Assembly: GCF_006345805.1 (NCBI RefSeq)
Contig: NW_021833771.1
Span: forward strand, 1-55,457
Length of the DNA stretch: 55,457 nt
Direction of reading: 5' to 3'
From: Octopus sinensis
Taxonomy: Eukaryota
The notes under the pieces were generated by a model that was not told where the DNA came from, searched no databases, and saw only the letters and a list, made by a program, of their open reading frames with translations. How positions within the stretch are numbered: the stretch's first letter is position 1; each line of letters starts with the position of its first letter. The translations under genes and the position numbers were made by a program. Shown in pieces: positions 889-54,681 of this stretch.

Positions 889-923
<35 letters not shown>

Positions 924-954
<31 letters not shown>

Positions 955-1386
955 GATAGAGAGAGATAGAGAGATAGAGAGAGATAGATAGATAGAGATA
1001 GAGAGAGAGATAGATAGAGATAGATAGATAGAGAGAGAGATAGATAATAGAGTAGATAGATAGAGATAGATAGATAGAGATAGATAGATAGAGATAGAAG
1101 ATAGATAGATAGATAGAGATAGATAGATAGATATAGATAGATAGATAGATAGATAGATAGAGATAGATAGATAGAGATAGATAGAGATAGATAGATAGAT
1201 AGATAGATAGAGATAGATAGATAGAGATAGATAGATAGAGATAGAGAGATAGATAGATAGAGATAGATAGATAGAGATAGATAGATAGAGATAGATAGAT
1301 AGAGATAGATAGATAGAGATAGATAGATAGAGATAGATAGATAGAGATAGATAGATAGAGATAGATAGATAGAGATAGATAGATAG

Positions 1387-1481
<95 letters not shown>

Positions 1482-1685
1482 GATAGATAGATAGAGATAG
1501 ATAGATAGATAGATAGAGATAGATAGATAGATAGATAGAGATAGATAGATAGATAGAGATAGATAGATAGAGATAGATAGATAGAGATAGATAGATAGAG
1601 ATAGATAGATAGAGATAGATAGATAGATAGATAGAGATAGATAGATAGAGATTTAGATAGAGAGAGATTTAGATATAGACAGATA
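924..1685. repeat. (GATA)n/(GA)n compound microsatellite with frequent 10-bp GATAGATAGA period
   Basis: Read directly from the sequence. Confidence 0.97.
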
Positions 1686-2128
1686 GTTATATTGTTTCGA
1701 CCACTACTGCACAGTTACTGGCTGTCAGAAATATTTGTTGTATTGTTAATAGATTTCTCGTAATTCCGCCTATGAAATTTACTTCTTCTACATCCTAGTA
1801 AAAAACTGAAGCCATACATTATTTTATATCATTTGCCATAAAGGCAGTACACAGACAGAAGCTTCCGGGCTGGACACGGACATTAATGGGATGAATGATA
1901 ATGATACAAGGATGATAAGGATGGGAGAAGAGAGAAAGTGCCCGCCGACCCTCTGCTTCTGTATAACGTTCTTTTAAAAAAAAAAAACACTGAATGAGGT
2001 ATTAACCCTCTTACAATTTTATAAAAAGTTCATTACAAATGCTGACCGATACTGCAAATTTATTGATGGTGCCGACAGTCCCCTAGCTATTGAGATGAGG
2101 TTTTAATATTCTTGAGGCAGACATTAAT

Positions 2129-2948: not shown

Positions 2949-3344
2949 GTGGAGGTGCAATGGCCCAGTGATTAGGGCAGCGGCCACGCGGTCGTAGGAT
3001 CGCGGTTTCGATTCCCAGACCGGGCGTTGTGAGTGTTTATTGAGCGAAAACACCTAAAGCTCCACGAGGCTCCGGCAGGGGATGGTGGTGATCCCTGCTG
3101 TACTCTTTCACCACAACTTTCTCTCACTCTTACTTCCTGTTCCTGTTTCTGTTGTACCTGTATTTCAAAGGGCCGGCCTTGTCACTCTCTGTGTCACGCT
3201 GAATATCCCCGAGAACTACGTTAAGGGTACACGTGTCTGTGGAGTGCTCAGCCACTTACACGTTAATTTCACGAGCAGGCTGTTCCGTTGATTCGGATCA
3301 ACCGGAACCCTCGTCGTCGTAACCGACGGAGTGCTTCCACCCAT
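2949..3344 (+). mobile_element. SINE family C, full length, with 8-bp TSD
   Basis: A box TGGCCCAGTGA, B box GGTTTCGATTCC; TCGTAGGT at 2941-2948 and 3345-3352; highly similar to the copies at 26672 and 49191. Confidence 0.93.
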
Positions 3345-3523: not shown

Positions 3524-3893
3524 GGAGCACTGCGTCGGTTACGACGACGAGGGTTCCGGTTGATGCGATCAACGGAACAGCCTGCTCGTGAAATTAACGT
3601 GTAAGTAGCTGAGCACTCCACAGACACGTGTACCCTTAACGTAGTTCTCGGGGATATTCAGCGTGACGCAGAGAGTGACAAGGCCGGCCCTTTGAAATAC
3701 AGGTACAACAGAAACAGGAAGTAAGAGTGAAGGAAAGTTGTGGTGAAAGAGTACAGCAGAGATCACCACTATCCCCTGCCGGAGCCTCGTGGAGCTTTAG
3801 GTGTTTTCGCTCAATAAACACTCACAACGCGAGTGTTTATAAACACACAACGACCGCGAGTCCGCTGCCCTAACCACTGGGCCATTGCACCTC

Positions 3894-7770: not shown

Positions 7771-10700
7771 CAGGGGCGTGCACTCTCAGCAATGCAAGGT
7801 ATGCGCTGCATGCCTTCCTTGTTTCAAAGAAAATACGTCCAGTTGTTTTAGAAATATTGTCTCCACTTCGTACATCTGCTTTGATAAATGCTTTTAGAAG
7901 ATCGCATGATACACACTCCCTCTCTGTCTGTATTAGTTTGTCCTTCCTTCCTCTCTCTCTCTCTCTATCTTAGTGACTCGATAAATTTATCGCTTATCAT
8001 GCGTTGGGAAGACAGCATGAGTCCCTTCTCTATGTCTTTGATAGTTTGTCTCTTCCCTCTTTCTTGTTTAAAAGATATACAACGAGGAATGGTCACCCCC
8101 TTTCTCTCAGCGATTCGACAAATTCAGTTTGGCGTGTCATGCTGTGCTAAAATCGCATTTCACGCCTCTCTGGCTATTTTGACCGGAACAAAAGCCGTCC
8201 CATAATTCTTGTTTTAGCCAGCTGAAATGTTGGAATAGCCTTCGCATGTAAGTTTGAAATTTTTTATCCAAAACATCCGTTTGCACTATCATATTTTTAG
8301 AAAGTTTTGAAAGCAAAAATATCTACATTATATTTCTTATTTTAGAAATAGCTAATTAATCTTAAATTAATTTAACAAAGGGTATTTTTCCGTTTTGTTG
8401 AAATTGACTTAAAATTTACGCCGGCGCTTCCACGTGGGTCCTTAAATAAGAGCAGCCTTTTTCAAAATGAGTGAAATGTGTGCTATAAACGATATTTTGA
8501 GAACTAGTTTTTCTAAAAGGGACTTCGATGGGAAAAAATTAATTATAAATCGCGGGAGACCAACACCGAATTTACCTAATTTGCGAAGCTACAACAAGAA
8601 ATTCACGAGACAATTTCAGGTTAATTCGTATGAAAAGAAGAAATGGTTAACTGGAAGTGTTGCTCTTAATAAATTATTCTGTTGGCCGTGTTTACTTTTT
8701 GGCTTAGAAAAAATGTTTGGAATGATAAAGGCTATGATGATTTAAATAATTTACATATGGCTATGCTAAAGCACGAGCGTTCTCAAAGGCATATAAAATG
8801 TTTGATAGACCTTAAAATATTCGGGAATGTTCGCATAGACTTACAATTAGATGCACGTAAAAATCTAAGCATACAACAGCATAATGAGAAAGTTCGACGA
8901 AACAGATCCATTCTGCAACGATTGATCGATGTTGTTATTTTTTTAGGCCTCCAGGAATTATCGTTTCGGGGTCATTTTGAATCTGAAGGCTCTAATAATC
9001 GGGGAAATTATAAAGAACTCGTTTATTTGATCAGTAAGTATGACAAACAAATGGAAAGTCATTTAGATACAGCTTCTATCTTCACTGGTCTGTCGAAGCA
9101 ATTCATAAAGTTATGTTGAATGAGATGCAGAAGGAAATTGACCAAGCTAAGTTTGTTTCTATTCTTGTTGATGAGACATCTGATGTCTCAGCATCTTCAC
9201 AACTGTCAATAGTTTTACGTTATGTTACAGAAGACTGTGTGACGAAAGAACGATTTATCGGTTTTAGTGATGTTAGTGCAGATCGATCTGCAAATGCTTT
9301 ATCTGAACATGTTTTTAAATGCATTGAGACGTAGGAATGTGGAAACAAATTGATTGCGCAGACATATGATGGTGCCGCTACAATGGCAGGACAACTAAAT
9401 GGGTTACAGGCAAAAGTAAGAAAGAAATATGAATGTGCGATCTTTATTCATTGTTGTGCCCATATCCTAAATTTAGTTCTTTCACAATCATGCTCTGCTA
9501 TGAAAGAATGCAAGATATTTTTTTCTACAATAAACGGACTCGGTACATTTTTTACGAAATCACCGAAAAGGACTAATGCATTAGATAATATTGTTAAAAA
9601 AAGATTTCCGAAAGCAACAGCAACTAGATGGAATTACTCCTCACGTCTTATTATTACCACAAAGGAAAATTATAATTTCATAATCAGCCTTTTTGAACAC
9701 ATCATTGAAAATCCTGAAGCATGGGATGATATCACCATAAATTCAGCAATTGGATTCTTACACACTTTAAAAGCTCCTGATTTCTTATTTTTGTTAGAGG
9801 TATTCAGTGACATTTTTTCTTTTACTGACGTCTTATTTAACATACTCCAGAGTAAAAGTCATGACATAGTGTATTGTAAACAGCAAATAGATAAAACTAG
9901 AACTGTACTCGAAAACAAACTTGATAATTTTTCAGTCTTTTATGATAGGTTAGGGGAAAAATATGGAGTCGATGCAGGAATCGGAATTCAGAGATCCAAG
10001 AATATATCTATTGATCCCCAACGACATTATAGAACGCTTTATAACAAAATTATAAGTACAATAGTTGACCAAATAAAAGCACGATATTCATCCTTAGAAG
10101 AGTTTAAATTCATGGAACTTTTGAATTTCAACAAAGTTGATGAGTATTGCAAACAATTTCCTGTGGACTCTTTAGATTCTTTAAGAACAACTTATGGCAG
10201 ATTTTTTGATGTAATACGATTACAAAGTGAGCTCAATGTGATGTATTCAATGAAAGATTTTAAAAAACCAAGTGTAAGTCATTTAATGAGTTACATTAAC
10301 AGCACTGATCTTGTTGAAGCTATGCCAGAACTCTTCAATCTGTGCAAGTTGATTTTGACAATTCCGTCTACCACTGCTTCTGTAGAGCGATCCTTTTCTG
10401 CATTAAGTAGAATTAAAACATACCAAAGAAATGCGACAGGAGAAAGAAGGCTGTCTGGGTTAGCACTAATGTCAATTGAAAAAGATTTATTACAAGAATT
10501 GATGAAAAGAGAAGATTTCTATGAAAATGTGATAGATATATTTGCCCAGAAAGATCGAAGAATTGAATTAATTTATAAATGAGCTAAATAACATTTTAAA
10601 ACATAAAAAAAATATATTAAAGAGCATATATTACAGGTTTTGCTAAGTGTTTGTTATAACGTAAGGTTCGACCTTCTTACATCAGTATTGTTTCGCAGGA

Positions 10701-11529
10701 GAAATGTTTTGATTTCTTCGTGAAACCTAACCTACATAGATTTCCCTTTCTGTGCTGCTGGGTGTAGTCTATTTACGGCCGTAAATAAGTGTTTTGTTTC
10801 ACTTTCAATAAGTGTCTTGTTTCAATCTCAGAGATGTTGACTTCTGCCAGAACAGTTTTGGGAGGCTTTTTACAATGTTGAATTTTCGCTGTCTTTCATT
10901 GTGTGCGTATTCATGTATATGCGTGTATTTTCAATGTTTATGCGTGAGACGTAGTCCTTTAATGTACGGAGTTCAGTAAGTCTCAGAACAGTCAATAATT
11001 TTCCCGGAATTGACAAGTAGCATGATAAAGAACCTGACTTGTCTTCGAGAGGGTAACGATCTAAAACCATGGCCATATAATGTAACTAAATGTGTTCTTT
11101 TAATTAAATCATTTCATTCAGCTCAACCGATAGGTATAGGGGCTAATGCAGAATCGCACCCCTTTGAAAAACGAATTTATGTGAAAATTTTTTTTCGGAT
11201 TCCTACCTTTAACAGAGATTCTGAATATGCAAAAATATTGACAGAATCCAATTTCATCTTTATTACATTTCACTTATGATTTTTAGACTTTTCTAAGGGA
11301 GAATGAGGATGGGAAAGTACTGACGTTTCGAAGAGCAAAGAATAATACAAACAATACACTTATTTCAGGATCATCTCTGCACAGCCATTTTTTATACCCT
11401 GTTTATTCTGCATATTCAGAATCTCTTATATGTAAATCGTAGGAATAGGAAAATGTTTTACTGAAAAATTGCCGGGGGGGGGATGAAATTAATTGCATGC
11501 CCAACGCCGGAAGTCACCGCACGCCACTG
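7771..11529 (+). mobile_element. hAT-superfamily DNA transposon, complete ends
   Basis: Left end CAGGGGCGTGC; right end reverse-complements to CAGTGGCGTGC (10/11); 8-bp TSD ATATACAT at 7763-7770 and 11530-11537; encodes a hAT transposase. Confidence 0.95.
8467..10582 (+). pseudogene. hAT transposase (ZMYM1-like/PRKRIR-like type), disrupted
   Basis: Four ORF pieces: LFCWPCLLF, LSFRGHFES..NRGNYKEL, ILVDETSD, QTYDGA, IHCCAH, TRWN, TASVERSFSAL.RIKT. Lesions: apparent 1-bp loss in the A run near 8710, frameshifting deletion near 9095, in-frame TAG at 9332-9334. Confidence 0.93.
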
Positions 11530-11858
11530 ATATACATATACACATATATATATATATACATATACACATATATATATACATACACATATATATATATATA
11601 CATATACACACATATATATATATATATATATACGTATATACATACATATATATATATATATATATACGTATATACATACATATATATATATATACGTATA
11701 TACATACATATATATATATATATATATACGTATATACATACATATATATATATATACACATATACACATATATATATATATATATACACATATATAATAT
11801 ATATATATACACATATATATATATATATATACACATATATATATATATACACATATAC

Positions 11859-11897
<39 letters not shown>

Positions 11898-12819
11898 CAT
11901 ATATATTATATATATATATATATACATACATATATATATACAACATATATATATATATACACATATATATATCATATATATATATACACATATATATATA
12001 TATATACACACATATATATATATACACACACATATATATATATAATATACACACATATATATATATATATATACACACATATATATATATATATACACAC
12101 TATATATATATATATACACACATATATATATATATATACCACATATATATATATATCACACATATATATATATATATACACCATATATATATACCACATA
12201 TATATATATATAGATATATACACACACATATATATATATATACACACATATATATATATATACACACATATATATATATATACACACACATATATATATA
12301 TATACACATATATATATATAATATATATATATATACACATATATATAATATATATATACACATATATATATATATAACACATATATATATACACATATAT
12401 ATATTACACATATATACATATATATATATACATATATATATTATATATATACACATATATACATATATATATATACATATATATACACACACATATATAT
12501 ATATACACATATATATACATATATATATACATATAATATATACATACACATATATATATATACACACATATATACATATATATATATACATACACATATA
12601 TATATACACACATATAATATACATATATATATATATATACACATACACATATATATACATACACATATATATATATACACACATATGTATACACATATAT
12701 ACATATATATACACACACATATATATATACACACATATATACATACACACATATATACACATACACATATATATATATATATTACACATATATATACACA
12801 TATATATATACACATATAC

Positions 12820-12850
<31 letters not shown>

Positions 12851-12969
12851 CATATATATATCACATATATATATATATATACATATATATAACACATATA
12901 TATATATATATATATACATATATATATACACATTATATATATATATATATATATACATATATATATACC

Positions 12970-13002
<33 letters not shown>

Positions 13003-13260
13003 TATATACACATATATATATATATATACACACATATATACATATATATTATATATATATAACATATATATATATAATATATATATATATACACACATAT
13101 ACATATATATACACTCATATATATATATATTACACATACGTATATATATTTATATGCATATATACACACACGTACACACATATATAAACGCATATATGTG
13201 TGCGTGCGCCTCTGTGTGTGTGTGTGTGTGAGAGTGCACACACACACACACACACACGTA
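11530..13260. repeat. Long (TA)n/(CA) interrupted microsatellite, continuation of the array left of the hAT
   Basis: Same TATATACACA-type units on both sides of the transposon. Confidence 0.97.
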
Positions 13261-15934: not shown

Positions 15935-16252
15935 ATGTATGTATGTATATCATATATATGCCCTAGAGCATTATCTGGTTAGCCTGACATTTAACATTTA
16001 TTGTTCGAAAGTAATATACAAGCTTTAGAATAAAGGCTGTGACAATGTACCGTACAAACATTCCTGGTTCCTGACTTCACGATCCTTACATTATTGGTTG
16101 TACATTCAGATAGGGACATCAAAGTGGCCGTGGAACAGTCATTGCCAAAGTAGTGACCAGAGTTATTAAAATATCCGATCGTCTAAAATCTATTGGTAAC
16201 CAAAGAAGTGAATTTTCATAGGGGTTAATTGAAATAATCTACCTTTACGTGT

Positions 16253-16800
16253 ATGAAATAAGGCGACAGATAGTACTAGGCAGAGAGGCAATGGTCAACA
16301 TGAGCAGGGTCTGGAAGTGTAGAGACATCAGACTCGCTACCAAATGCAGATTGGTGAATGCAATTGTCTTCCCAATAGCAACATCTGGATGCGAGACCTG
16401 GACACTAAAGAAAGCTGACCAGAAGAGAATTAATGCATTCGAGCTTTGGTGTTGGAGAAGACTTTTACGGATTCTATGGACAGCGAGGCTCACCAATAGA
16501 GAAGTTCTTAAGCAGATCAGGCCCAAAATGTCGCTAGAAGCTAGGATCACCAAGCATAGATTGGCATATTTCGGTCATATTATGCGGAGAAAATCCCTGG
16601 AGAAGGACATCATGCTCGGAATGGTCAGTGGCAAGAGAGGGAGAAGCCGACCAAGAACCCGCTAGCTGACACCATCAAGAGTGATACCGGAATGGACATA
16701 GCGAATCTGAAAGAAGCGGCCCAGGATAGAACTGGCTGGTGGACACTGATCCAACGAGTAATCGAGAGTCGACTTCGACTGAGCGGGTAGATAGATTGAT
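16253..16800 (+). mobile_element. RTE-clade (BovB-like) LINE 3' fragment, C-terminal part of the RT ORF
   Basis: IVFPIATSGCETWTLKKADQKRINAFELWCWRRLLRI.WTAR.TNREVL..YFGHIMRR.SLEKDIMLG; ends CTTCGACTGAGCGG followed by a GATA-type tail. Confidence 0.92.
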
Positions 16801-19815: not shown

Positions 19816-20057
19816 AGGAGTGGCTGTGTGGTAAATAGCTTGCTTATCAACCACATGGTTCTGGGTTCAGTCCCACTGCGTGGCACCTTGGGCAAGTGTC
19901 TTCTACTATAGCCACGGGCCGACCAAAGCCTTGTGAGTGGATTTGGTAGACGGAAACTGAAAGAAGCCCGTCGTATATATGTATATATATATGTGTGTGT
20001 GTGTATGTTTGTGTGTCTGTGTTTGTCCACCTAGCATTGCTTGACAACCGATGCTGG
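19816..20057 (+). mobile_element. SINE family A, 3'-truncated
   Basis: Head, internal TA/TG microsatellite and start of the 3' part as in the 23659 copy. Confidence 0.92.
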
Positions 20058-23658: not shown

Positions 23659-24057
23659 AGGAGTGGCTGTGTGGTAAGTAGCTTGCTAACCAACCACATG
23701 GTTCCGGGTTCAGTCCCACTGCGTGGCATCTTGGGCAAGTGTCTTCTGCTATAGCCCCGGGCCGACCAATGCCTTGTGAGTGGATTTGGTAGACGGAAAC
23801 TGAAAGAAGCCCGTCGTATATATGTATATATATATATATATTTATGTGTGTGTGTTTGTGTGTGTGTCTGTTCCCCTAGCATTGCTTGACAACCGATGCT
23901 GGTGTGTTTACGTCCCCGTCACTTAGCGGTTCGGCAAAAAGAAACCGATAGAATTAGTACTGGGCTTACAAAAGGAATAAGTCTCGGGGTCGAGTTGCTC
24001 GACTAAAGGCGGTGCTCCAGCATGGCCGCAGTCAAATGACTGAAACAAGTAAAAGAG

Positions 24058-24058
<1 letters not shown>
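23659..24058 (+). mobile_element. SINE family A, full length
   Basis: A box TGGCTGTGTGG, B box GGTTCAGTCCC, TTGGGCAAGTG core, internal TA/TG microsatellite, tail GGCGGTGCTCCAGCATGGCCGCAGTCAAATGACTGAAACAAGTAAAAGAG. Confidence 0.95.
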
Positions 24059-24111
<53 letters not shown>

Positions 24112-25719: not shown

Positions 25720-25875
25720 GGGCATTGTTCGAACCTGAGAACGAAGGCCCGAAACTGGCGTTTATGAGTGCAATCGAAAAGGTGAATCTTAAGAATGAGA
25801 TTCTACCTCAGACGTTACTTATATACGACGTTTTGAAGGTTCAACCTCAGGATAGTTTTCAGGCATCAAATTTAG
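25720..25875 (+). CDS. Internal coding exon of an ionotropic glutamate receptor (kainate-type), start of the amino-terminal domain
   Basis: Acceptor TTCAATTTCTTTTTCAG, donor G|GTAAGT, 156 bp, phase 1-1. GALFEPENEGPKLAFMSAIEKVNLKNEILPQTLLIYDVLKVQPQDSFQASNL aligns by eye with GluK2 GGIF..[41 protein letters not shown]. Confidence 0.88.
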
Positions 25876-26009: not shown

Positions 26010-26340
26010 GAATCTAAATTGGTTGGCATCCTTTTTGTCTCGGGAGACAATGGAGTTGCGCATAAAGTAGTCTAGTCTGGCTTTTACATTTCATGTCCTG
26101 ATACATTTCCTGCTGTGGCTGTGTAGTCCTATCCTGGACAAACACTCCCTCTGGCAGGTACCGCAAATATAACGAAGACTGTTCCTGGCTGGTTGTAATA
26201 CCATAGTTTCTTGCTGACGTCTTTTCTTGTCTTTCCATTTCTCCTCTCTCTCTGTCACTCCTTTGTATTCCCTCTCTTACGGTACGTCGCCAGTCTCCAC
26301 GGTTGCCGGCAACTGCCTCCCAACCGCTAATATCTAAAGA
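26010..26340 (-). mobile_element. RTE-clade LINE 3' fragment with a single C-terminal CCHC finger
   Basis: Minus strand reads GWEAVAGNRGDWRRTVREG, then a frameshift in a GA run, then YICGTCQRECLSRIGLHSHSRKC and a stop. Confidence 0.85.
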
Positions 26341-26671
26341 TATGTAAGAATTAAAAATGGGTCCTTGTAAAATAAATTACGGTCAGAAAATATTTAATAT
26401 GAACTATAAATAAAGATCATTTTTTATCATGGGAAAAGCGAACGAAATTGTCCACATTTCGAGCGATATATTTCTTCCGTGAAATATAAAATGGTTTTAA
26501 TGATGTGGTTCTCCATTCTCTCTCCAATAAAATGCTATGGTTGAAGTGATGGAACTCTTCTACCCATGAGGAAAATCTTAAGTTTTTGCTTTATTTTAGC
26601 AGGCATCAGACGTATGACAACTTATTCCGACGCACACAAACACCCCTCACACACACACATGGAAATGGAAA

Positions 26672-27060: not shown

Positions 27061-27489
27061 TACATGTATATACAGCATGCTTGGAAAGGAAATATCCTGA
27101 ATGACATCTGGGTATCAGAATGATATCAGTAGTCAAACAACTGTCCGAAAACAGTCATACTGACCACGTATACTCGTTGTCGGAATCTAGGACATGATAT
27201 TTCAGCTAAAATTTTTCCATCACATTTCTTACTTTCAGTGGTGCAAATGACTTAACCACTTTTCGTAGGCTGATGATATCCGCTGAGGTTGCAGCCTAGG
27301 GCCAAGAACCTCTTACGCCTTTCCCTTGATATGTCTGACAGAAAAATGAGATAGCTGACGTCTCATGTATGATGGCCTGCAAATTATCTATATGTACCTG
27401 GCGCAAAACGCATACGCACACACTTATATACAACGGCCCACACAGACACATGTAGGAGTACATACATACATATATATATACACACACAC

Positions 27490-27647
27490 ACACGACGGGC
27501 TACTTTCAGTTTCCGTCTACCAAGACCACTCACAAGGTTTTGGTCGGTCCGATGCTATAGTTGAAGACGCTTACCAAAGGTGCCACGGAGTGGTACTGAA
27601 CTTGGAACCATGAGGTTGGTAAGCAAGCTACTTACCCAACAGCAACT
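27490..27647 (-). mobile_element. SINE family A, 5' half, diverged
   Basis: CTTTCAGTTTCCGTCTACC..GGAACCATGAGGTTGGTAAGCAAGCTACTTACC. Confidence 0.85.
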
Positions 27648-27649
27648 AT

Positions 27650-27695
<46 letters not shown>

Positions 27696-27784
27696 ATTAT
27701 ATATATATATATACTCATTATCACTGTGGAAACCATGTAGGCAGTCAGTAAGAAGCTTTTGTTCGTCTTGAGGCCGATAGAGAT

Positions 27785-27881
27785 TCCTTTTATTTCCTGA
27801 TGAGAAGACGGCATAATGCATCCTTCATTCCTTCGGAATTAAGAGTATGCAGTCTTCGAAACATATGTCGAAAGTAAAGGA
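27785..27881 (+). ncRNA. Type I hammerhead ribozyme motif with intact catalytic core
   Basis: Stem I TCCTTTTATTTC/GAAAGTAAAGGA (10/12 paired); CTGATGA at 27797-27803; stem II GAAGAC-G-GCATA/TATGC-A-GTCTTC; GAAA at 27858-27861; palindromic stem III ACATATGT; GTC cleavage triplet ending at 27869. Confidence 0.8.
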
Positions 27882-27917
27882 CTTTAGTTAAAATCTTCGT
27901 TCGTCTTAGCTATTCAT

Positions 27918-28100
27918 TGTCCCCCTAGCATTGCTTGACAACCGATGCTAGTGTGTTTACGCCCCCGTCACTTAGCGGTTCGGCAAAAAGAGACCGACAG
28001 AATAAGTGCTGGGCTTACAAAGAATAAGTCCCGGGGTCGATTTGCTCGACTAAAGGCGGTGCTCCAGCATGGCCGCAGTCAAATGACTGAAAAGAGTGAG
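27918..28100 (+). mobile_element. SINE family A, 3' half
   Basis: CCCCTAGCATTGCTTGACAACCGATGC..GGCGGTGCTCCAGCATGGCCGCAGTC. Confidence 0.9.
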
Positions 28101-29626
28101 AGAGTATATGCGATATATATGTCTCTCTGTATACTGACACGAACATCATTCATGCACACAAACATACATACCTACACAAACTCACTCATTATATATATAA
28201 ATGTATGTGTGTGTGCGTATGTGTGTGTGTGTGTGTGTGTGTGTGAGTAATAGGCGTAAAGATAGACAAATATATGCAGACACTGACTCTCTCTCTTCAC
28301 TCGCATTTATATTCTCACTATCTCTAACACACACACACGCATACACAGAAAACACACATAAGCACATAATCTCACAATACAGTGCAATGCGGATATCATT
28401 TAAACGTATCTAAGTACAGCAGAGTTACGTCCCTTCATGCCAACCAATATTACACAATAACGCTACCGATATACATTCCTAAAAACAAACGCTAAATGAG
28501 CAACGAGACACAGAACGTTTTACACCTTTACTCGGTTATAGGAAACCATAGAATGGCTTGAGGCGTCAACAATTAACAGAAGTAGATTCTGTACTACATT
28601 TGCTCTGTTGGATATTTTTAGCGACGCAATAATAAATATATCACGCACACAAGCATGCGATCCCAGGCAAACATACACTCTTCTAGCAGAAATAGATGTT
28701 TAAATAGATATCGTTTTATATGATTGCTTCTGCATCTATTTCTTGCACTTTATCTCGCTCTCTATTTTACTCCTTCTGTCAGGTTTTTTTCCATCCCTGC
28801 GCCTTCCCTTCTACGTGGGTGTGTGTATTTGTGTATACGTTTGTGGAAAATTGTAATATGCAAATATATAGGTATGTGTGCCAGTCTGTGTCTGTATGTG
28901 TGTGTGTGCTTATATGTATAGACATACACAAAATATAAACAACCATATACACAAACACATACACACACAAACAAACATTTACGCATGAACCTGCAGAGAG
29001 AACAAGAGAGGAATAAGAACTGATATATATATATATTATAACCACTTATATATCATATATGTACACACAAACACAGACACACACACACTCATACACATAC
29101 ATAATATACATACATATATACATACATACATCCGTGCTTACATATTTACATACATACGTCTGTGCATACGTATTTATGCATTAGGTGTGGGCAATTTTTA
29201 ATGCGTCTATTTCTCTAAAATTCTTTTTGAGTACACACGCACACATATGAGAAAGGGAAGAGTGATGGCTAGAGTGAATGAGTGAGTGACAGAGAGAGAG
29301 AGAGAGAGAAATAGACTGACTGATAGGTCGATAGATAGATCGATTGATAGATAAATAGATAGATCGACAGATAGATAGATAGATAGATAATTGGATGGAT
29401 GGATGGATAGATGGGTGGATGGATAGATAGATAGATAGATGGGTGGATGAATAGATAGATGGGTAGATGGATAGATAGATAGATAGGGGGATGGATGGAT
29501 GGATGGATGAATCGATCAATATATAAATAGATACATACATACTTATATACATGCATACATACATACAGTATGTATGTATGTGTATATACATACATACATA
29601 GATACAGCATGAGTGTGTATATATAT

Positions 29627-30900: not shown

Positions 30901-31298
30901 CTTACACACGCGAACACGCACGGACATAGTCATCTATCTAAAGAGTCTTCCTCAATAAGTGCTATACTGGTCCAACCCTATATCTAAATAAAACAATGGC
31001 GAACGATTACTAAAGCATCTAATCAATGTCGGGGAGTTGATGAAAAAAATGTAATGTACAAAGTCTTTGCAAGTTAACGGATTAATGAAGTGGTGAAAAA
31101 TAGTTGGATGGGAAAGTAAAACATTTTGGATTACTTTATTTTATCTTGGGAAGATCATTCTCTTTTAGTGCCTTGTTAGTGCCTTCTAGTACCTTATTCA
31201 TATAACACACGCACTGGTCTGATTTCCACTCATTTATTTATCTGTTCTTACTAAAATTTCCGTTGGGTCTAGCAACCTTTTTAATAGTCGTTGACTCT

Positions 31299-31772
31299 GT
31301 CAGCATGAGCAGGGTCTGGAAGAGTAGAGACATCAGACTCGCTACCAAATGCAGATCGGTGAATGCAATTGTCTTCCCAATAGCAACATATGGATGTGAG
31401 ACCTGGACACTAAAGAAAGCTGACCAGAAGAGAATTAATGCATTCGAGCTTTGGTGTTGGAGAAGACTTTTACGGATTCTATGGACAGAGAGGCTCACCA
31501 ATGGAGAAGTTCTTAAGCAGATAACGCCGAAAATGTCGCTAGAAGCTAGGATCACCAAGCATAGATTGGTATATTTTGGTCATATTATGCGGAGAAAATT
31601 CCTGGCGAAGGACATCAGGCTGACCAAGAAACCGCTGGCTTGACACCATCAAGAGTGATACCGTAATGGACATAGCCAGTCTGAAAGAAGCGGCCCAGGA
31701 TAGAACTGGCTGGAGAACACTGATCCATCGAGTAACCGAGGGTCGACTTCGACTGAGCGGATAGAGAGAGAG
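31299..31772 (+). mobile_element. RTE-clade (BovB-like) LINE 3' fragment, copy 2, with a small internal deletion
   Basis: Near-identical to the 16253 copy; lacks about 30 bp after GACATCA. Confidence 0.92.
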
Positions 31773-31900: not shown

Positions 31901-33490
31901 CAGTGGTTCTCAACTCGTTTGAGGTCAGGGTGCACTTAAACCCCCTACAAATAATCGTGGGCGCAGCATCCTCTTCTATCCTCTTTTACTTGTTTCAGTC
32001 ATTTGACTGTGGCCATGCTGGAGCATCGCCTTTTTGTCGAGCAAATCGACCCCAGGACTTATTCTTTGTAAGCCCAATACTTATTCTATCGGTCTCTTTT
32101 GCCGAACTGCTAAGTGACGGGGACGTAAACAAACCAGCATCGGTTGTCAAGCAATGCTAGGGGGACAAACCCATATACATATTGCTCTTTTACTCTTATT
32201 TGTTTCAGTCGTTTGACTGCGGCCATGCTGGAGCATCATCTTTTAGTCGAGCAAATCGACCCCAGGACTTATTCTTTGTAAGCCTAGTACTTATTCTATC
32301 GGTTTCTTTACCCGAACCGCTACGTTACAAAGCATATACAAATTTCTAAGCTTAGTAACATATAATAACACATACCTTAAGATTCTTCATTCTTGAGCTC
32401 ATGGGAAACATTCGCTCGATGTGTCTTGGCAATTTCTTCAATGTTCGGGCGAATGTTTGAAAGACAAACTCGCATTTCTTCATCAATGCGTGTAAGTGTT
32501 CCTCGCTTTTTGTACTTGATGGTAGAAAGAGTGGAAAATCCCAATTCACGAAGATATGAAGTTGAAAATTGCAGCAGAACTATAAGAGCTTTTTTAGAAA
32601 TCGAATCATATTCATCTTTTATAGAAATCCAGAAAGCTTCAAGTGACAATTTCTTGTATTTCATCATTAATCCACGGTCAGTAGTTGTAGCAGCGAGGTT
32701 TCTCTTCTTCTATCAATGTTAATTCGAAATCATTGGAAGTTTCCACGAATGGGTTTCTGATCCTGTCATATTGTTCAGTTTTCAGTGATAGGAAATACGA
32801 ACTCAATTTTAATTCTAAACGGGAGTGTTTCATTTATGCCTGTTTCGCTTAGACTTAAAGGAAACATTTCCAAATTCCCTTCGAAAGCTTTACGTTTCCA
32901 AATCTTTCATTTTGTCAGTGGACATTAGAAGGTTTTCTTCTTTCCCTTGCATGCTAGTATTTAAAATATCGAGCTGCTGAAATATATCTGCCAAAAACTA
33001 TAAACAGGCCATCCAAAATTCAGAACGAAGAAGGTCACAGAAATTAGATTGTTTCATTTCTTCAAAGAACACAAGAAGTTCGTGTACATGCGCAAGTACA
33101 TTTCTTCTTGACAGCCACCTTACTTCGCTATGTAAAAGCAGCCGTTTGTATTGAGAATCCAAATCGTTACAAAACTGTTCGAATATACGAGATTTGACAG
33201 GTCTTGTTTCAATAAAGTTTCCCATCTGAACAACTTAACCTAAAACTTATTTTAGTTCTTCCCCTAATGTTTTTGCCATCATGGCCTCTCTATGAAGAAA
33301 GCAGGGAGTAACGATAGCATCCTTATTTTGTTTTCTTTTGTTTGTTTTTTTTGTTTGTTTGTTTTTTATAAAAGCTGTGAGACCCTTAACACAGTCTACC
33401 GTGGAAGGGGCTCCATCTATACAAATACCCACACATGATTTCCATGATAACTGCCATTTATCAAAGCATGTATTCAGAAAAAAAGAAACT
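31901..33490 (-). mobile_element. Decayed Buster/Charlie-type hAT (FAM200/SCAND3-like transposase fragments), one terminus retained
   Basis: Terminus CAGTGGTTCTCAAC; minus-strand peptides [61 protein letters not shown]. Confidence 0.88.
31970..32330 (-). mobile_element. Two tandem SINE family A 3' halves nested in the hAT terminus
   Basis: Two copies of CTTTTACTTGTTTCAGTC..GCAAATCGACCCCAGGACTTATTC; AGCAT at 31965-31969 and 32331-32335. Confidence 0.85.
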
Positions 33491-39781: not shown

Positions 39782-40188
39782 TTTACTCTTTTACTCTTTT
39801 ACTTGTTTCAGTCATTTGACTGCGGCCATGCTGGAGCACCGCCTTTAGTCGAGCAAATCGACCCCGGTACTTATTCTTTGTAAGCCCAGTACTTATTCTA
39901 TCGGTCTCTTTTGCCGAACCGCTAAGTGACGGGGACGTAAACACACCAGCATCGGTTGTCAAGCAATGCTAGGGGACAAACACACAAACACACACATACA
40001 CACACACATATATATATATATATACATATATACGACAGGCTTCTTTCAGTTTCCGTCTACCAAATCCACTCACAAGGCATTGGTCGGCCCGGGGCTATAG
40101 CAGAAGACACTTGCCCAAGATGCCACACAGTGGGACTGAACCCGGAACCATGTGGTTGGTTAGCAAGCTACTTACCACACAGCCACTC
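39782..40188 (-). mobile_element. SINE family A, full length
   Basis: Reverse complement of the 23659 copy. Confidence 0.95.
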
Positions 40189-42572: not shown

Positions 42573-42721
42573 AGGAGTGGCTGTGTGGTAAGTAGCTTGC
42601 TTCCGGGTTCAGTCCCACTGCGTGGCATCTTGGGCAAGTGACTTCTGCTATAGCCCCAGGCCGACCAATGCCTTGTGAGTGGATTTGGTAGATGGAAACT
42701 GAAAGAAGCCTCTCGTGTATG

Positions 42722-42754
<33 letters not shown>

Positions 42755-42810
42755 TTGTGTTTGTCTCCCCTAGCATTGCTTGACAACCGATGCTGGTGTG
42801 TTTACGATTC
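42573..42810 (+). mobile_element. SINE family A, 3'-truncated
   Basis: AGGAGTGGCTGTGTGGTAAGTAGCTTGC head and body. Confidence 0.9.
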
Positions 42811-44384: not shown

Positions 44385-44574
44385 CTCTTTTACTTGTTTC
44401 AGTCATTTCACGCCTTTAGTCGAGCAAATCGACCCCAGGACTTATTCTTTGTAAGCCTAGTACTTATTCTATTGGTTTCTTTTGCCGAACCGCTAAGTTA
44501 CGGGGACGTAAACACAACAACATCGGTTGTCAAGCGATGATGGGTGGGGGGTACAAACACGGACACACAAACAT

Positions 44575-48540: not shown

Positions 48541-48595
48541 GATAGAGTAGATAGATGGATGGATAGACAGATAAATAGATAGATGTGGCGAAACA

Positions 48596-48725
48596 GCCAC
48601 ATGGTTCCTGGTTCAGTCCCACTGCGTGGCACCTTGGGCAAGTGTCTTCGACTGAAACCTCGAGCCGACCAATGCCTTGTGAGTAAATTTGGTAGAAGGA
48701 ATCTGAGAGAACCCTGTGGGATATA
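48596..48725 (+). mobile_element. SINE family A fragment
   Basis: CCACATGGTTCCTGGTTCAGTCCCACTGCGTGGCACCTTGGGCAAGTGTC. Confidence 0.85.
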
Positions 48726-49190: not shown

Positions 49191-49578
49191 GTAGAGGCGC
49201 AATGGCCCAGTGGTTAGGGCAGCGGACTCGCGGTCGTAGGATCGCGGTTTTGATTCCCAGACCGGGCGTTGTGAGTGTTTATTGAGCGAAAACACCTAAA
49301 AGCTCCACGAGGCTCCGCAGGGGATGGTGGTGATCCCTGCTGTACTCTTTCACCACGATTTTCTCTCACTCTTACTTCCTGTTTCTGCTGTACCTGTATT
49401 TCAAAGGCCGGCCTTGTCACTCTCTGTGTCACGCTGAATATTTCCCCGAGAACTACGTTAAGGGTACACGTGTCTGTGGAGTGCTCAGCCACTTACACGT
49501 TAATTTCACGAGCAGGCTGTTCCGTTGATTCGGATCAACCGGAACCCTCGCCGTCATAACAGGCGGAGTGCTTCCACC
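49191..49578 (+). mobile_element. SINE family C, full length, with 13-bp TSD
   Basis: AAATAACTATGAT at 49178-49190 and 49579-49591. Confidence 0.95.
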
Positions 49579-50709
49579 AAATAACTATGATAGCCTATGG
49601 GAGTATGCGAGCAGCTGCAAACAACTATCGAAATGTATTCTGATTAAACGAGGTTCGTTTTGTCAAGTCACCTGTCGAGACACGCCTGCGCTAATGATGC
49701 CGTACCAGTATTTATACAACATCTCATCCGTGAGGCACTTATGCGCAAAGGGTCGAAACGGTTGTAGTGATTAAAAAGAGAATCTCGTGGATTCCATTCT
49801 CTCTTTTTTGCTTTCATATTTCATCTATGTATTTTCCAACAAGAAAAATACACAAACGTATACACAAATAACGAATAAAAACGCCGTATGCAGTTATATG
49901 TGGCTGGATGTGTTCGTTTGTATGTATTTAAATATATATGTATGCGTGCATTTAAACGACGATAGTGGTAGTTAAATGGTTCCTAAATGCTATCTAAAGC
50001 AAACTGTTCGTATACTAAATCATCGGCAATGGAAGTTTAAAGCATTATTTGTCATTTTAAGGAAAATTTTTGTAATTTAGTTATATTCATAGCTTTGTAA
50101 TGTGAGAGTATACGATAAAGGTAAGATTTTGAGTTTTATTTGTTTATATATATATATATATATCTTACTATTTATTTATTTATTTGACATTTCTCATTCT
50201 CTCCACGATATTTATTATTACTATTACAGGAAAAACCCATTAACTGATATATCATACATTATTGAATAATTATTTAATAAAACATAACACTAGTGTAGTT
50301 CACTGCATCTCTAACGGAGTATTGTCTATCATAAATTTCGTTATAACGGTTTAAAATGGTCTCCTGTAAATAGGCAAGCATTTAACTCATAAATCATGTA
50401 CGCTACGAAATACATAAAAAGTACGCCATTTTGAAATATTCAACACATATAAATGGCATTTCTGTTGGTCAGTTAAAAATGTTTTACTTAAAAATCATAA
50501 ATCTGTTTCAGTTACTTTATCTTGTTGTATATCTAAGCATTTATATTCGCCGTTCGTTCGTTCGAACGCATGAATTGCATATAACATAGGCAAACGCTCG
50601 GTAAAAGATGGGAAACAGAATTACTAATATATATGTAATCACATATTTACGCTGGCAAACGACAACACACATTATCATATACATACATGCATAATATTTA
50701 TATTTACAT

Positions 50710-50747
<38 letters not shown>

Positions 50748-50779
50748 CAGCTGTTTTGTTCCTTTATATATAGCTTACA

Positions 50780-51800
50780 TATGTGTGTATGTGTATATAT
50801 ATATATATACATATATACTCATATACATATATACTCATTTATATATATATATACTCATATACATATATACTCTTTTTATATATATATATATATATACTCA
50901 TATACATATATACATATATACTCATTTATATATATATATATTATACTCATATCATAATATACTCATTATATATATATATATTATATACTCATATACATAT
51001 ATACTCATTTATATATATATATATTATATTTATACTCATATACATATATACTCATTATATATATATATATATATATATACTCATATACATATATACTCAT
51101 TATATATATATATAATATCTCTACTCATATACATTAATACTCATTTATATATATATATTATATTAATATACTCATATACATATAACTCATTTATATATAT
51201 ATATATATATATATATACTCATATACATATATACTCATTTATAATATAATTATATATATATACTCATATACATATATACTCATTTATATATATATAATAT
51301 ACTCATATACATATATACTCATTTATATATAATATACATATATACTCATATACATATTACATTACTCATATACATATATACATATATACTCATATACATA
51401 TACCTCATTTATATATATACTCCCCCATTATATATATATATATAATCTCATTTAATATATAACTATATATACTCATATATATATTATAATATATACTCAT
51501 ATATATACTCATTAATATATATAATATCTCATATACATATATACTCATTTATTATATATATATACATATATACTCATATACATATATACTCCATTTATAT
51601 ATATATATAGATACTCATTTATATTAATATATATACCTTTATATATATATATACTCATATATATATATATACACTATATACTCATTATATATATATATAC
51701 ATATATACTCATTTATATATATATATACATATATACTCATTTATATATATATATACATATATACTCATATACATATATACTCATATATATATACATACAT
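50780..51800. repeat. Compound minisatellite with TACTCAT anchors separated by variable (TA)n
   Basis: Read directly from the sequence. Confidence 0.95.
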
Positions 51801-53020
51801 ATATATATCACAGCTATTTTGTACATATATGTATGTATGTGTTTATGTATGCATGTATATATGTATGTATGTATGTGTTTATATACATATCCATGTATAT
51901 ACCCATTTGTGCGGAAGTGCCTGCACATATTTAAATACACGCATCGATCACACACACACACGTATACAGCAACAAAAATATTACCAAATATAATACATGT
52001 TCACGAATTTATACCTATAAAAATATATGCATATGTGCGTGCGTTACATGGATAAAAAAAACACACACAGAAATATATGCAGCTATTTATCCTAACCAGT
52101 AAATTAGCATTGCGCTATTTTGCGGTTTTTCGATTGAATAGTGTGCTACAAACATGTTTATAGCCGAATAATCTTGAACAAGCTCTATTGCTCCTCGCTC
52201 CTGCCAGTCTTACTATGATAATGATTATATAATTGCGGGCATACATAGTTGCACATAGCGTTGGAGAAAACATGATCGTGTATTTATTATTTAGGCGGAC
52301 ATATTGTATTTTTAGTGGACTTTATTTTAGTGGCCTTATTGTATTTTTCCCCTCTTGATTTTCCTGCTCCACCGATTGTTTCAGATTGCTATTTATGTGT
52401 AATATATTTTTGCCTTATCCTCATAAAACTGAAACGCTAATAGACGTACAGATGCGCATGTGTATATAAGTGTATAAGAAACACTAATCCAATATAAACA
52501 CAAATTCTTCAGCCTACATACCTATACAAATCTTCTCTCTCTTTCACAATGTATGTATATACGTGTGTGCGTGTATGTGTGTATGTGATCATGTATGCAT
52601 TTACCTATCTGTCTCTCAATCCGTCTAATTTGTTTATCTATCTGTCTGTGTATGCGTGTGTGTGTATATATATATATAATATAAAACATATGCATATATA
52701 CATACATATATCTGTCTGTATGTGTGTGTGTATATATATATATATATAAAACATATGCATATATACATACACATATCTGTCTGCCTGTATGTGTGTGTAT
52801 GTATATATATATATATATAATATAAAATATGCACGCCCATATACATACATATATGTACATACCTACATCTATATGGGTATGCATATATGGGTAGAGGACA
52901 CCAAAAAAACGTTGAACACAATGAGAAACAGATAGATAAATTGATAGATAGATGTGTATATACAAATCTATGCATATATATGTATACACACATACCTATA
53001 CACACACATATGCATATATA

Positions 53021-53178
53021 CAACGGGCTTCTTTCAGTTTCCCTCTACCAAATCCACTCACAAGGCTCTGGTCGGCCCGAGGCTATAGAAGAAGACACTT
53101 GCCCAAGTTGCCACGAAGATAGGCTGAACCCAGAACCATGTGGTTGTTAAGCAAATTACTTACCACAGAGCCACTCCT
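53021..53178 (-). mobile_element. SINE family A, 5' half
   Basis: CGGGCTTCTTTCAGTTTCCCTCTACC..ACCACAGAGCCACTCCT. Confidence 0.9.
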
Positions 53179-54530: not shown

Positions 54531-54639
54531 AGCTTTCTCTCCGTGACTCGCTAAGTCTTCCGGGTTTGTTTATAAAAGTATTATTTATGTAGTTACATGT
54601 GTGTGTATTTATATATTATGTACACTCTCACATACACGC

Positions 54640-54673
<34 letters not shown>

Positions 54674-54681
54674 GTATGTAT

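What the first reader, a model, noticed from the sequence alone, without database searches (positions are those of the whole stretch)
27785..27881. Intact hammerhead ribozyme on the sense strand of a glutamate receptor intron
Seen: all conserved core positions are present (CUGAUGA, G-C closing pair, GAAA, GUC triplet). Stem I pairs 10/12 and stem II 11/12, continuing into CTT-C-ATTCC/GGAAT-T-AAG. Stem III is the palindrome ACATATGT, only 2-3 bp as a monomer but 8 bp between two molecules. A 9-bp direct repeat GTTCGTCTT (27761-27769, 27899-27907) brackets the motif. Established: Penelope-like retroelements carry hammerheads with palindromic stem III that cleave as dimers, and conserved intronic hammerheads exist in amniote genes. 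Inference: a PLE-derived ribozyme 1.9 kb downstream of the iGluR exon donor could cut the receptor pre-mRNA, possibly only when nascent transcripts dimerise. The long stem II is atypical of minimal PLE hammerheads.
Basis: partly seen in the sequence, partly recalled or inferred. Interest (0 to 1): 0.8.

Follow-up and report, generated by a model that had tools for sequence, protein, structure and literature searches.

The report
Solo hammerhead ribozyme in receptor intron
A complete type I hammerhead self-cleaving RNA motif really sits on the sense strand of an intron of a kainate-type glutamate receptor gene, but it looks like a single leftover copy of a ribozyme-carrying retroelement, and nothing here shows that it regulates the gene.

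Summary
At 27785-27881 (+) there is a complete type I hammerhead. It has the core CUGAUGA (27797-27803), a G-C closing pair, GAAA (27858-61), and GUC with cleavage at 27869/27870. Helix I pairs 10/12, and helix II is a 54-nt hairpin pairing 11/12. Helix III is the palindrome ACAUAUGU, which gives 2 bp plus a 4-nt loop in a monomer.

It is the only such motif in the window, against about 0.0008 expected by chance. Rfam Hammerhead_1 aligns over its full length, but below threshold (19.2 bits, gathering 34, E 0.015).

A 12-nt direct repeat (11/12 identical, 138 nt apart) brackets it. The unit lies between a (TA)34 microsatellite and SINE fragments, 1.9 kb downstream of a kainate-receptor-like exon on the same strand.

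There is no second hammerhead and no Penelope-like ORF in 55 kb. Helices I and II fold robustly, but helix III does not (P about 0.02). Dimerisation in trans is weak (about -7.4 kcal/mol).

The best reading is a solitary insertion of the Penelope-like/retrozyme class, carried along in the intron and at most a slow cleaver. Copy number, orthologous conservation and cleavage could not be tested with these tools. It is a new member of a known kind, of low to moderate interest.

The parts
27785..27796 (+). Hammerhead helix I, 5' strand
   Evidence: Pairs 10/12 with 27870-27881. Pair probabilities are 0.8-0.98 in most contexts up to +-500 nt.
27797..27803 (+). Catalytic core box CUGAUGA (C3-A9)
   Evidence: Read directly. 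Aligned to the Rfam RF00163 core.
27804..27857 (+). Helix II, a 54-nt imperfect hairpin closed by G10.1-C11.1
   Evidence: 11/12 basal pairs plus the apical CUU-C-AUUCC/GGAAU-U-AAG. Pair probabilities exceed 0.9 for the first six pairs. Its length is why covariance models lose score.
27858..27861 (+). Core box GAAA (G12, A13, A14, A15.1)
27861..27868 (+). Helix III, palindrome ACAUAUGU (A15.1-U16.1, C15.2-G16.2, AUAU loop)
   Evidence: Two bp as a monomer, with pair probability about 0.02. An 8-bp intermolecular duplex of -7.0 kcal/mol forms between two copies.
27869..27870 (+). Predicted self-cleavage site (after C17 of GUC)
   Evidence: Position follows from the hammerhead numbering. Cleavage was not tested.
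27870..27881 (+). Hammerhead helix I, 3' strand
27758..27769 (+). Left copy of the 12-nt direct repeat, TTTGTTCGTCTT
   Evidence: A shared 9-mer between the flanks arose in 0.5% of shuffles. It is either a target-site duplication or terminal redundancy of a 138-nt unit.
27896..27907 (+). Right copy of the direct repeat, TTCGTTCGTCTT
   Evidence: In the MFE fold, 27893-27907 pairs with 27770-27784 and extends helix I, but the fold is not better than shuffles (z=-0.54).
27648..27715 (.). (TA)n microsatellite, 42 nt upstream of the left repeat
   Evidence: Microsatellites, (TA)n among them, are preferred PLE targets according to PMC8557442.
27460..27647 (-). SINE head fragment, unrelated to the ribozyme
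   Evidence: 77-84% identical to eight other copies in the window.
27917..28133 (+). SINE tail fragment that abuts the ribozyme unit
   Evidence: 88-94% identical to other copies. Homology begins at 27917 in all of them. No direct repeat brackets the ribozyme plus this tail.
25720..25875 (+). Kainate-type iGluR exon (start of the amino-terminal domain) with AG/GTAAGT splice sites

Best explanation
The motif is a genuine type I hammerhead ribozyme sequence delivered by a single insertion of a small ribozyme-bearing retroelement. That element belongs to the class that includes Penelope-like element terminal repeats and their non-autonomous derivatives, the metazoan non-LTR retrozymes.

The inserted unit is about 126-138 bp and is bounded by a 12-nt direct repeat. 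It landed next to a (TA)n microsatellite in a SINE-rich intron of a kainate-type glutamate receptor gene.

Because it is in sense orientation, it is transcribed as part of the pre-mRNA, provided the gene is expressed. Helices I and II should form.

Three features argue for slow or negligible self-cleavage (inferred):
- Helix III is only 2 bp.
- No second copy is available in cis to build the 8-bp dimeric helix III.
- Helix II has no loop at the position that normally makes the rate-enhancing contact with helix I.

The motif is therefore most likely a neutral passenger.

Shown: the motif, its uniqueness in the window, its fold, its repeat boundaries and its genomic context. Inferred: its retroelement origin, its low activity and its lack of function.
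For: - **Motif:** core and helices are complete. It is the only hammerhead-like motif on either strand of 55 kb, including Penelope-type mini-hammerheads, against a chance rate of 0.0144 per Mb.
- **Rfam:** type I model RF00163 aligns over its full length with E=0.015.
- **Helix III:** its architecture (2 bp plus a palindromic 4-nt loop, GAAAY/RUH) is that of canonical metazoan type I hammerheads of retroelements.
- **Boundaries:** a 12-nt direct repeat brackets the unit, p about 0.005.
- **Setting:** a (TA)n microsatellite lies adjacent, which is a known PLE target type.
- **Precedent:** most such motifs are dispersed single copies, many of them in introns.
- **Folding:** the monomer's active fold is 2.2 kcal/mol above the MFE, and helix III has P about 0.02.
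- **Dimer partner:** no partner half-site exists within 27 kb on either side at up to 3 mismatches.
Against: - No other copy of the 27716-27916 sequence could be found, so family membership rests on architecture alone. The searches covered the window, metagenome and viral contigs, a 5.8-billion-protein collection through translated peptides and papers.
- No PLE ORF is present in the window.
- The 54-nt helix II fits neither published PLE mini-hammerheads nor retrozyme hammerheads.
- All 15 core positions and both long helices are intact. That fits a recent insertion, but it would equally fit selection.
- A mussel hammerhead with the same helix III design cleaves as a monomer at about 0.1 per min. 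Low activity is therefore not assured.
Confidence: 0.72

Rival explanations
1. The ribozyme has been exapted as a regulator. It cuts the nascent receptor pre-mRNA inside this long intron, as a slow monomer or through pairing of nascent transcripts. This lowers the yield of spliced mRNA, much as the intronic CPEB3 ribozyme does in mammals.
For: - It is in sense orientation, 1.9 kb past the donor.
- At least 27.6 kb of intron follow it within the window, with no further receptor exon. That gives many minutes for even a slow ribozyme to act (inference from Pol II elongation rates).
- Core and helices are fully intact.
- There is precedent for intronic ribozymes that affect expression of a neuronal gene and for conserved intronic hammerheads in amniotes.
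Against: - There is no evidence of conservation, expression or cleavage.
- No cis partner exists for the dimer.
- Trans dimerisation has a Kd around micromolar.
- Helix III is essentially unformed in the monomer.
- The setting is a pile of SINE fragments and microsatellites.
- Intronic sense copies are common for this element class.
Confidence: 0.07
2. It is specifically the 3' terminal piece (pseudo-LTR) of a 5'-truncated Penelope-like element, rather than a retrozyme-type small element.
For: - PLE hammerheads are type I with a palindromic, very short helix III, and most occur as solitary truncated copies.
- Published PLE motifs have a longer helix II and a shorter helix I (4-5 bp). Here there are 6 and 4 contiguous bp next to the core.
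- A microsatellite lies beside the insertion.
Against: - No RT/GIY-YIG remnant is present.
- The conserved unpaired nucleotide between A9 and G10.1 is absent.
- A helix III loop is present, unlike in the mini-hammerheads.
- The cephalopod PLEs discussed in PMC8557442 are Naiads, which lack canonical hammerheads. This applies only if the window is cephalopod, which is unverified.
- The 12-nt repeats bound a unit of only 126-138 bp.
Confidence: 0.3
3. The ribozyme segment and the adjoining SINE tail (27917-28133) form one chimeric SINE with a hammerhead-containing head, like the schistosome SINE-like elements.
For: - The ribozyme unit directly abuts a SINE tail in the same orientation, 9 nt after the right repeat.
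- Hammerhead-bearing SINE-like elements are known in schistosomes.
Against: - No direct repeat brackets the ribozyme plus the tail, whereas a significant repeat brackets the ribozyme unit alone.
- Tail-only SINE copies occur elsewhere in the window.
- None of the other SINE copies carries the ribozyme segment.
Confidence: 0.05
4. It is a chance look-alike in AT-rich DNA, with no ribozyme ancestry.
For: - It is below the Rfam gathering score.
- Minimal descriptor matches do arise by chance at about 14 per Gb.
Against: - The observed helices go far beyond the minimal descriptor: 11 further base pairs, a factor of about 3e-5 by my calculation from base composition.
- The full-length Rfam alignment has E=0.015 after correction for 4,227 families.
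- The fold z-score is -2.4.
- The unit has its own flanking direct repeat.
Confidence: 0.01

Closest known systems
Canonical metazoan type I hammerheads of non-LTR retrozymes (e.g. the Mytilus galloprovincialis and Acropora millepora retrozymes, PMC7229834)
   Same: - Type I topology and the CUGAUGA / GAAAC / GUC boxes.
- Helix III of 2 bp capped by a palindromic 4-nt loop: mussel ACGCGCGU, here ACAUAUGU.
- Low GC (0.39).
- A small non-coding unit with flanking repeats longer than 4 bp.
   Different: - It is a single unit, not a tandem array.
- The unit is about 138 bp, against 170-400 bp.
- Helix II is a 54-nt hairpin instead of 4 bp plus a loop.
- Helix I has 4 bp then an internal loop, instead of 6 bp plus a loop.
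- The predicted circular unit is not unusually stable (z=-0.41).
Mini-hammerheads of Penelope-like elements (Cervera and de la Pena 2014, PMC4209133; Lunse et al. 2017)
   Same: - Type I topology with a palindromic 15.2-16.2 region that implies dimeric action.
- Longer helix II and shorter helix I.
- Mostly solitary dispersed copies.
- An association with microsatellite targets.
   Different: - A helix III loop is present.
- There is no extra nucleotide between A9 and G10.1.
- No PLE ORF or pseudo-LTR lies nearby.
- Helix II is far longer than the published 6-8 bp.
Conserved intronic hammerheads of amniotes (HH9, HH10) and the intronic CPEB3 HDV-like ribozyme
   Same: It is a self-cleaving motif on the sense strand of an intron of a protein-coding gene, here a neuronal one. 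A long downstream intron would give time for cleavage.
   Different: - Those are defined by deep orthologous conservation and demonstrated cleavage, and neither is known here.
- There was no Rfam HH9 or HH10 match.
- This copy sits among young repeats.
Schistosome SINE-like elements with hammerheads (Sm-alpha, Sj-alpha)
   Same: It is a type I hammerhead carried by a short non-autonomous retroposon, next to SINE sequence.
   Different: No Pol III promoter boxes or tRNA-like head were detected. No repeat brackets a ribozyme-plus-tail unit.

Membership tests
Hammerhead ribozyme, type I (Rfam RF00163) | Conserved core: C3 U4 G5 A6 N7 G8 A9, G12 A13 A14, A15.1-U16.1, H17 | tested here: met
   All positions are present at 27797-27803, 27858-27861 and 27868-27869.
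Hammerhead ribozyme, type I (Rfam RF00163) | Three helices around the core, with helix I open-ended and a G10.1-C11.1 closing pair | tested here: met
   Helix I pairs 10/12, helix II pairs 11/12, and helix III has 2 bp. Helices I and II are highly probable in the ensemble. Helix III is unstable as a monomer.
Hammerhead ribozyme, type I (Rfam RF00163) | Score at or above Rfam's gathering threshold (34 bits) | tested here: not met
   The score is 19.2 bits with E=0.015 and a full-length alignment. 50 nt of helix II are treated as a local end. There was no hit in the wider searches.
Hammerhead ribozyme, type I (Rfam RF00163) | Site-specific self-cleavage after H17 | not testable with these tools
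   This needs in vitro transcription or mapping of RNA ends.
Hammerhead ribozyme, type I (Rfam RF00163) | Tertiary contact between the helix I loop or bulge and loop 2, needed for fast cleavage at physiological Mg2+ | tested here: inconclusive
   Helix II continues as a helix where loop 2 normally sits. Helix I has a 2x2 internal loop after 4 bp. No standard contact can be assigned from sequence.
Penelope-like element hammerhead (mini-HHR in pseudo-LTR) | Located in the terminal repeat of an element that encodes RT and GIY-YIG endonuclease | tested here: not met
   No such ORF was seen in 55 kb (stop-to-stop ORFs; Pfam). Most published copies are, however, solitary.
Penelope-like element hammerhead (mini-HHR in pseudo-LTR) | Helix III absent or minimal, with a palindromic 15.2-16.2 region or loop 3 | tested here: met
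   ACAUAUGU is an 8-nt palindrome. It has a 4-nt loop, as in the less minimal variants.
Penelope-like element hammerhead (mini-HHR in pseudo-LTR) | Conserved unpaired nucleotide between A9 and G10.1 | tested here: not met
   A9 (27803) is followed directly by G10.1 (27804), which pairs with C11.1 (27857).
Metazoan non-LTR retrozyme | Short tandem repeats (two or more units of about 150-450 bp), each with a type I hammerhead | tested here: not met
   There is a single unit, and only 12 nt are repeated at a spacing of 138 nt. No second motif is present in the window. Monomeric derivatives are described in the literature.
Metazoan non-LTR retrozyme | Canonical type I hammerhead: helix III of 1-2 bp plus a palindromic 2-4 nt loop, helix I of 6 bp and helix II of 4 bp with interacting loops | tested here: inconclusive
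   Helix III fits, but helices I and II do not. A model built from four tested retrozyme hammerheads could not span the candidate.
Metazoan non-LTR retrozyme | Expressed as abundant, highly self-paired circular RNA | not testable with these tools
   The predicted 138-nt circle is not more stable than shuffles (z=-0.41). No expression data were available.
Conserved (exapted) intronic ribozymes | Orthologous conservation of the motif in the same intron across species | not testable with these tools
   No eukaryotic genome collection was on hand. Exact-protein look-ups and peptide searches returned nothing.

The most novel reading that the evidence does not exclude
The hammerhead has been retained as a co-transcriptional switch or timer on a kainate-type glutamate receptor gene of an invertebrate, possibly a cephalopod. 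Slow self-cleavage, or cleavage through pairing of neighbouring nascent transcripts when the gene is heavily transcribed, would occur within an intron of more than 29 kb. It would reduce productive splicing and couple receptor mRNA output to transcription rate. This would be a hammerhead counterpart of the mammalian CPEB3 ribozyme.
Probability: 0.05. Interest if true: 0.75.

Novelty: new member of a known kind. Interest (0 to 1): 0.3.

Why it matters
**If it is only a retroelement remnant.** It adds one more example to the thousands of dispersed type I hammerheads in animal genomes. It has two small points of note:
- The very long helix II makes it invisible to Rfam at default settings. Similar variants may therefore be under-counted.
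- My literature searches found no description of hammerheads in cephalopods, if that is indeed the source.

**If it cleaves the pre-mRNA in vivo.** It would be an invertebrate case of an intronic ribozyme acting on a neuronal receptor gene. That would bear on the open question of what genomic hammerheads do for their hosts.

Tried and rejected
1. **Rfam, wider searches.** Rfam at gathering score on the whole window and at E<=10 on 261 nt gave no hammerhead. Only a 107-nt search gave the sub-threshold hit. A whole-window E-value search was swamped by microsatellite look-alikes of mir-297 and mir-3149 and said nothing about hammerheads. The weak Xist_exon1 hit is a sequence-only chance match.
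2. **Custom covariance model.** I built a model from four experimentally tested retrozyme hammerheads. It did not reach the candidate, and all its hits were 51 nt or shorter. This is a limit of the method with a 54-nt helix II, not evidence against the motif.
3. **Search for related copies.** All of these were empty or unrelated, so copy number and orthology remain untested:
   - Self-BLAST found none.
   - A metagenome pattern scan gave five unrelated matches with no Rfam hits.
   - Viral contigs gave none.
   - Four exact-ORF look-ups gave none.
   - A peptide translated across the motif found nothing in 5.8 billion proteins.
   - Sequence strings found nothing in papers.
4. **Exon peptide searches.** The exon peptide had no hit in the protein collection or in Pfam.
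5. **Retrozyme-circle idea.** The 138-nt unit folded as a circle (z=-0.41) and the 150-nt unit with both repeats (z=-0.54) are no more stable than shuffles. A rod-like circular RNA is therefore not supported.
6. **Chimeric SINE idea.** I rejected it for lack of a bracketing repeat.
7. **Source organism.** I did not verify it.

Full report
**1. What is there**

- **Helix I:** 27785-27796 pairs with 27870-27881 at 10 of 12 positions. There are four pairs next to the core, a 2x2 internal loop (U.U, A.G), then six pairs.
- **First core box:** CUGAUGA lies at 27797-27803.
- **Helix II:** it runs 27804-27857 (54 nt). It is closed by G10.1-C11.1, pairs 11/12 at its base with one G.A mismatch, and continues into CUU-C-AUUCC / GGAAU-U-AAG.
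- **Second core box:** GAAA lies at 27858-27861.
- **Helix III:** it is the perfect palindrome ACAUAUGU at 27861-27868. As a monomer it can give only A-U and C-G closing an AUAU loop.
- **Cleavage site:** C17 is 27869, so cleavage would fall between 27869 and 27870.
- **Direct repeat:** It extends to 12 nt with one mismatch (27758-27769 and 27896-27907, spaced 138 nt).

**2. Is it more than chance?**

A descriptor scan of my own found one hit on both strands of the 55 kb, the candidate. The descriptor was CUGANGA, helix II, GAAA, helix III, UH and helix I. The same single hit came back when I allowed Penelope-type mini-hammerheads with any even palindrome in place of helix III and an optional extra nucleotide after A9.

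I also simulated 138.6 Mb of sequence with the window's first-order composition. Motifs with contiguous helices of at least 4, 6 and 2 bp arose at 0.0144 per Mb, about 0.0008 per window. The candidate has 11 further base pairs beyond those minima. From the base composition I calculate an extra factor of roughly 3e-5, so a chance origin is negligible even genome-wide (inference).

Further support:
- The 97-nt segment folds better than its shuffles (z=-2.4).
- Helices I and II keep pair probabilities above 0.8 in four of five sequence contexts, up to 500 nt on each side.
- Rfam gave nothing at its gathering score or in a 261-nt search.
- A 107-nt search with laxer filters returned RF00163, Hammerhead type I. 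It aligned over the whole model (1-45) at 27791-27875, with 19.2 bits against a gathering score of 34 and E=0.015 after correction for 4,227 families.
- The shortfall comes from helix II. Fifty nucleotides had to be skipped where the model expects ten.
- A covariance model that I built from four experimentally tested retrozyme hammerheads could not span the candidate at all.

**3. Surroundings**

- **The exon.** The segment 25720-25875 on the + strand has a polypyrimidine-AG acceptor and a GTAAGT donor.
  - Its peptide matches the start of the amino-terminal domain of kainate receptors. Against GluK2 residues 41-93, PDB phmmer gives E=3e-4, and all 21 hits are kainate-type receptors.
- **The intron.** This exon encodes only the beginning of the receptor. 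The DNA downstream must therefore be an intron, and at least 27.6 kb of it lie beyond the ribozyme within the window. The motif is on the sense strand, 1,909 nt from the donor.
- **Repeats around the motif.** The motif is embedded in repeats.
  - 27460-27647 is the head of a SINE in minus orientation.
  - 27648-27715 is a (TA)n tract.
  - 27716-27916 is unique in the window and holds the ribozyme.
  - 27917-28133 is the tail part of the same SINE family in plus orientation.
  - Complete SINE copies elsewhere in the window join head, microsatellite and tail directly. The ribozyme segment is not part of that SINE.
- **Chimeric SINE reading.** No repeat brackets the ribozyme plus the SINE tail. 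I therefore set aside a chimeric hammerhead-headed SINE.
- **Penelope-like ORFs.** No reverse transcriptase or GIY-YIG endonuclease ORF is present. The only recognisable coding remnants are a frameshifted hAT transposase and LINE-like C-terminal fragments.

**4. What it most likely is**

The 12-nt direct repeat that brackets only the ribozyme unit is unlikely by chance. A shared 9-mer between the two flanks arose in 99 of 20,000 shuffles (a post hoc test). It marks either a target-site duplication around a 126-bp insert or the terminal redundancy of a 138-nt unit copied slightly more than once.

Both readings fit a small non-coding retroelement. The literature describes two related carriers of such motifs.

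- **Penelope-like elements.** Their terminal repeats hold type I hammerheads with a minimal, palindromic helix III. These are mostly found as solitary truncated copies and cleave poorly, as dimers.
- **Metazoan non-LTR retrozymes.** These have canonical type I hammerheads whose helix III is 1-2 bp capped by a palindromic 2-4 nt loop.

[quoted passage not shown] It reports that monomeric copies are dispersed along chromosomes and that 44% of copies in Xenopus tropicalis overlap introns. Penelope-like elements also prefer microsatellite targets, including (TA)n, and one lies beside this insertion.

The candidate's helix III is built exactly like that of the mussel retrozyme hammerhead, ACGCGCGU. 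It lacks the extra nucleotide between A9 and G10.1 that is typical of Penelope mini-hammerheads. Its 54-nt helix II matches neither group. I therefore assign it to the class but not to a family.

**5. How it would work**

- **As a monomer.** The canonical fold costs 2.2 kcal/mol more than the MFE (-22.3 against -24.5). In the MFE, part of the core pairs with the helix III strand. Helix III has a pair probability near 0.02. Helix II also continues as a helix where loop 2 would normally contact helix I. The rate-enhancing tertiary contact of natural hammerheads therefore cannot be assigned (inference from established hammerhead structure).
- **As a dimer.** Two copies gain about 7.4 kcal/mol through the 8-bp helix III (-56.4 against 2 x -24.5). 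That corresponds to a dissociation constant in the micromolar range (my calculation).
- **Availability of a partner.** No second copy is available in cis within 27 kb on either side. A dimer would therefore need two separate nascent transcripts. That is conceivable only at the high local concentration of a heavily transcribed locus.
- **A caveat in the other direction.** The mussel hammerhead, with the same helix III design and poorly conserved loop contacts, cleaves as a monomer at about 0.1 per min in transcription buffer. The intron downstream is long enough to give a slow ribozyme many minutes.

My estimate is therefore weak or negligible cleavage and a neutral passenger (0.72). A real regulatory effect remains possible but unsupported (about 0.05-0.07).

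**6. What could not be done**

The questions that decide between "ordinary remnant" and "retained ribozyme" could not be addressed with these tools. They are copy number in the source genome, presence in orthologous introns, transcription, and cleavage. No eukaryotic genome collection was available, and every indirect route came back empty. I also did not verify the source organism.

**7. Verdict**

The Penelope assignment and the proposed action on the receptor pre-mRNA are not shown. It is a new member of a known kind. The unusually long helix II is a minor variant, and it hides the motif from standard Rfam scans.

Noticed in passing
window 8446-10579 (+): A frameshifted remnant of a hAT-type DNA transposon. 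Pfam gives the hAT C-terminal dimerisation domain (E=3e-10) and DUF4371 in adjacent frames.
   Followed up: partly
window 23662-24085 (+), 19819-20055 (+), 39792-40187 (-), 42598-42806, plus partial copies at 13-202, 31977-32328, 44411-44547, 48594-48717 and 52985-53175: An abundant composite SINE family built as head, internal (TA)n(TG)n microsatellite, then tail. Copies are 77-95% identical. Head-only and tail-only fragments flank the ribozyme unit. ARAGORN calls no tRNA in the window.
   Followed up: partly
window 16222-16662 (+) and 31206-31640 (+); also 26017-26376 (-) and 54547-55116 (+): ORF fragments with peptides typical of the C-terminal part of LINE-type retrotransposon proteins. 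The first two are near-identical to each other, and the last has a weak C2H2 zinc-finger match. None gave a Pfam RT hit.
   Followed up: partly
window 3033-3288 (+) and 3572-3821 (-); third copy 49217-49556: Two copies of a repeat of about 250 nt lie in inverted orientation about 300 nt apart, forming a large inverted repeat. A third copy lies 46 kb away. I saw this only through near-identical ORF translations.
   Followed up: no
window 857-1714, 11450-13230 and 50700-52050: Kilobase-scale microsatellite or short-tandem-repeat blocks of (TA)n, (TATG)n-like and (CTAT/CTCT)-like units. They produce hundreds of spurious sub-threshold Rfam matches to repeat-derived miRNA families (mir-297, mir-3149, mir-466, mir-1277).
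   Followed up: no
L005 740-789 (metagenome contig Ga0307984_1069078, 1,069 bp, 38% GC): This contig has CUGAUGA ... GAAACAUAUGUC with a 7-bp helix I and the same ACAUAUGU palindrome, but no regular helix II. It has no Rfam hit and is unrelated in sequence to the window. It may be chance or an irregular hammerhead.
   Followed up: partly
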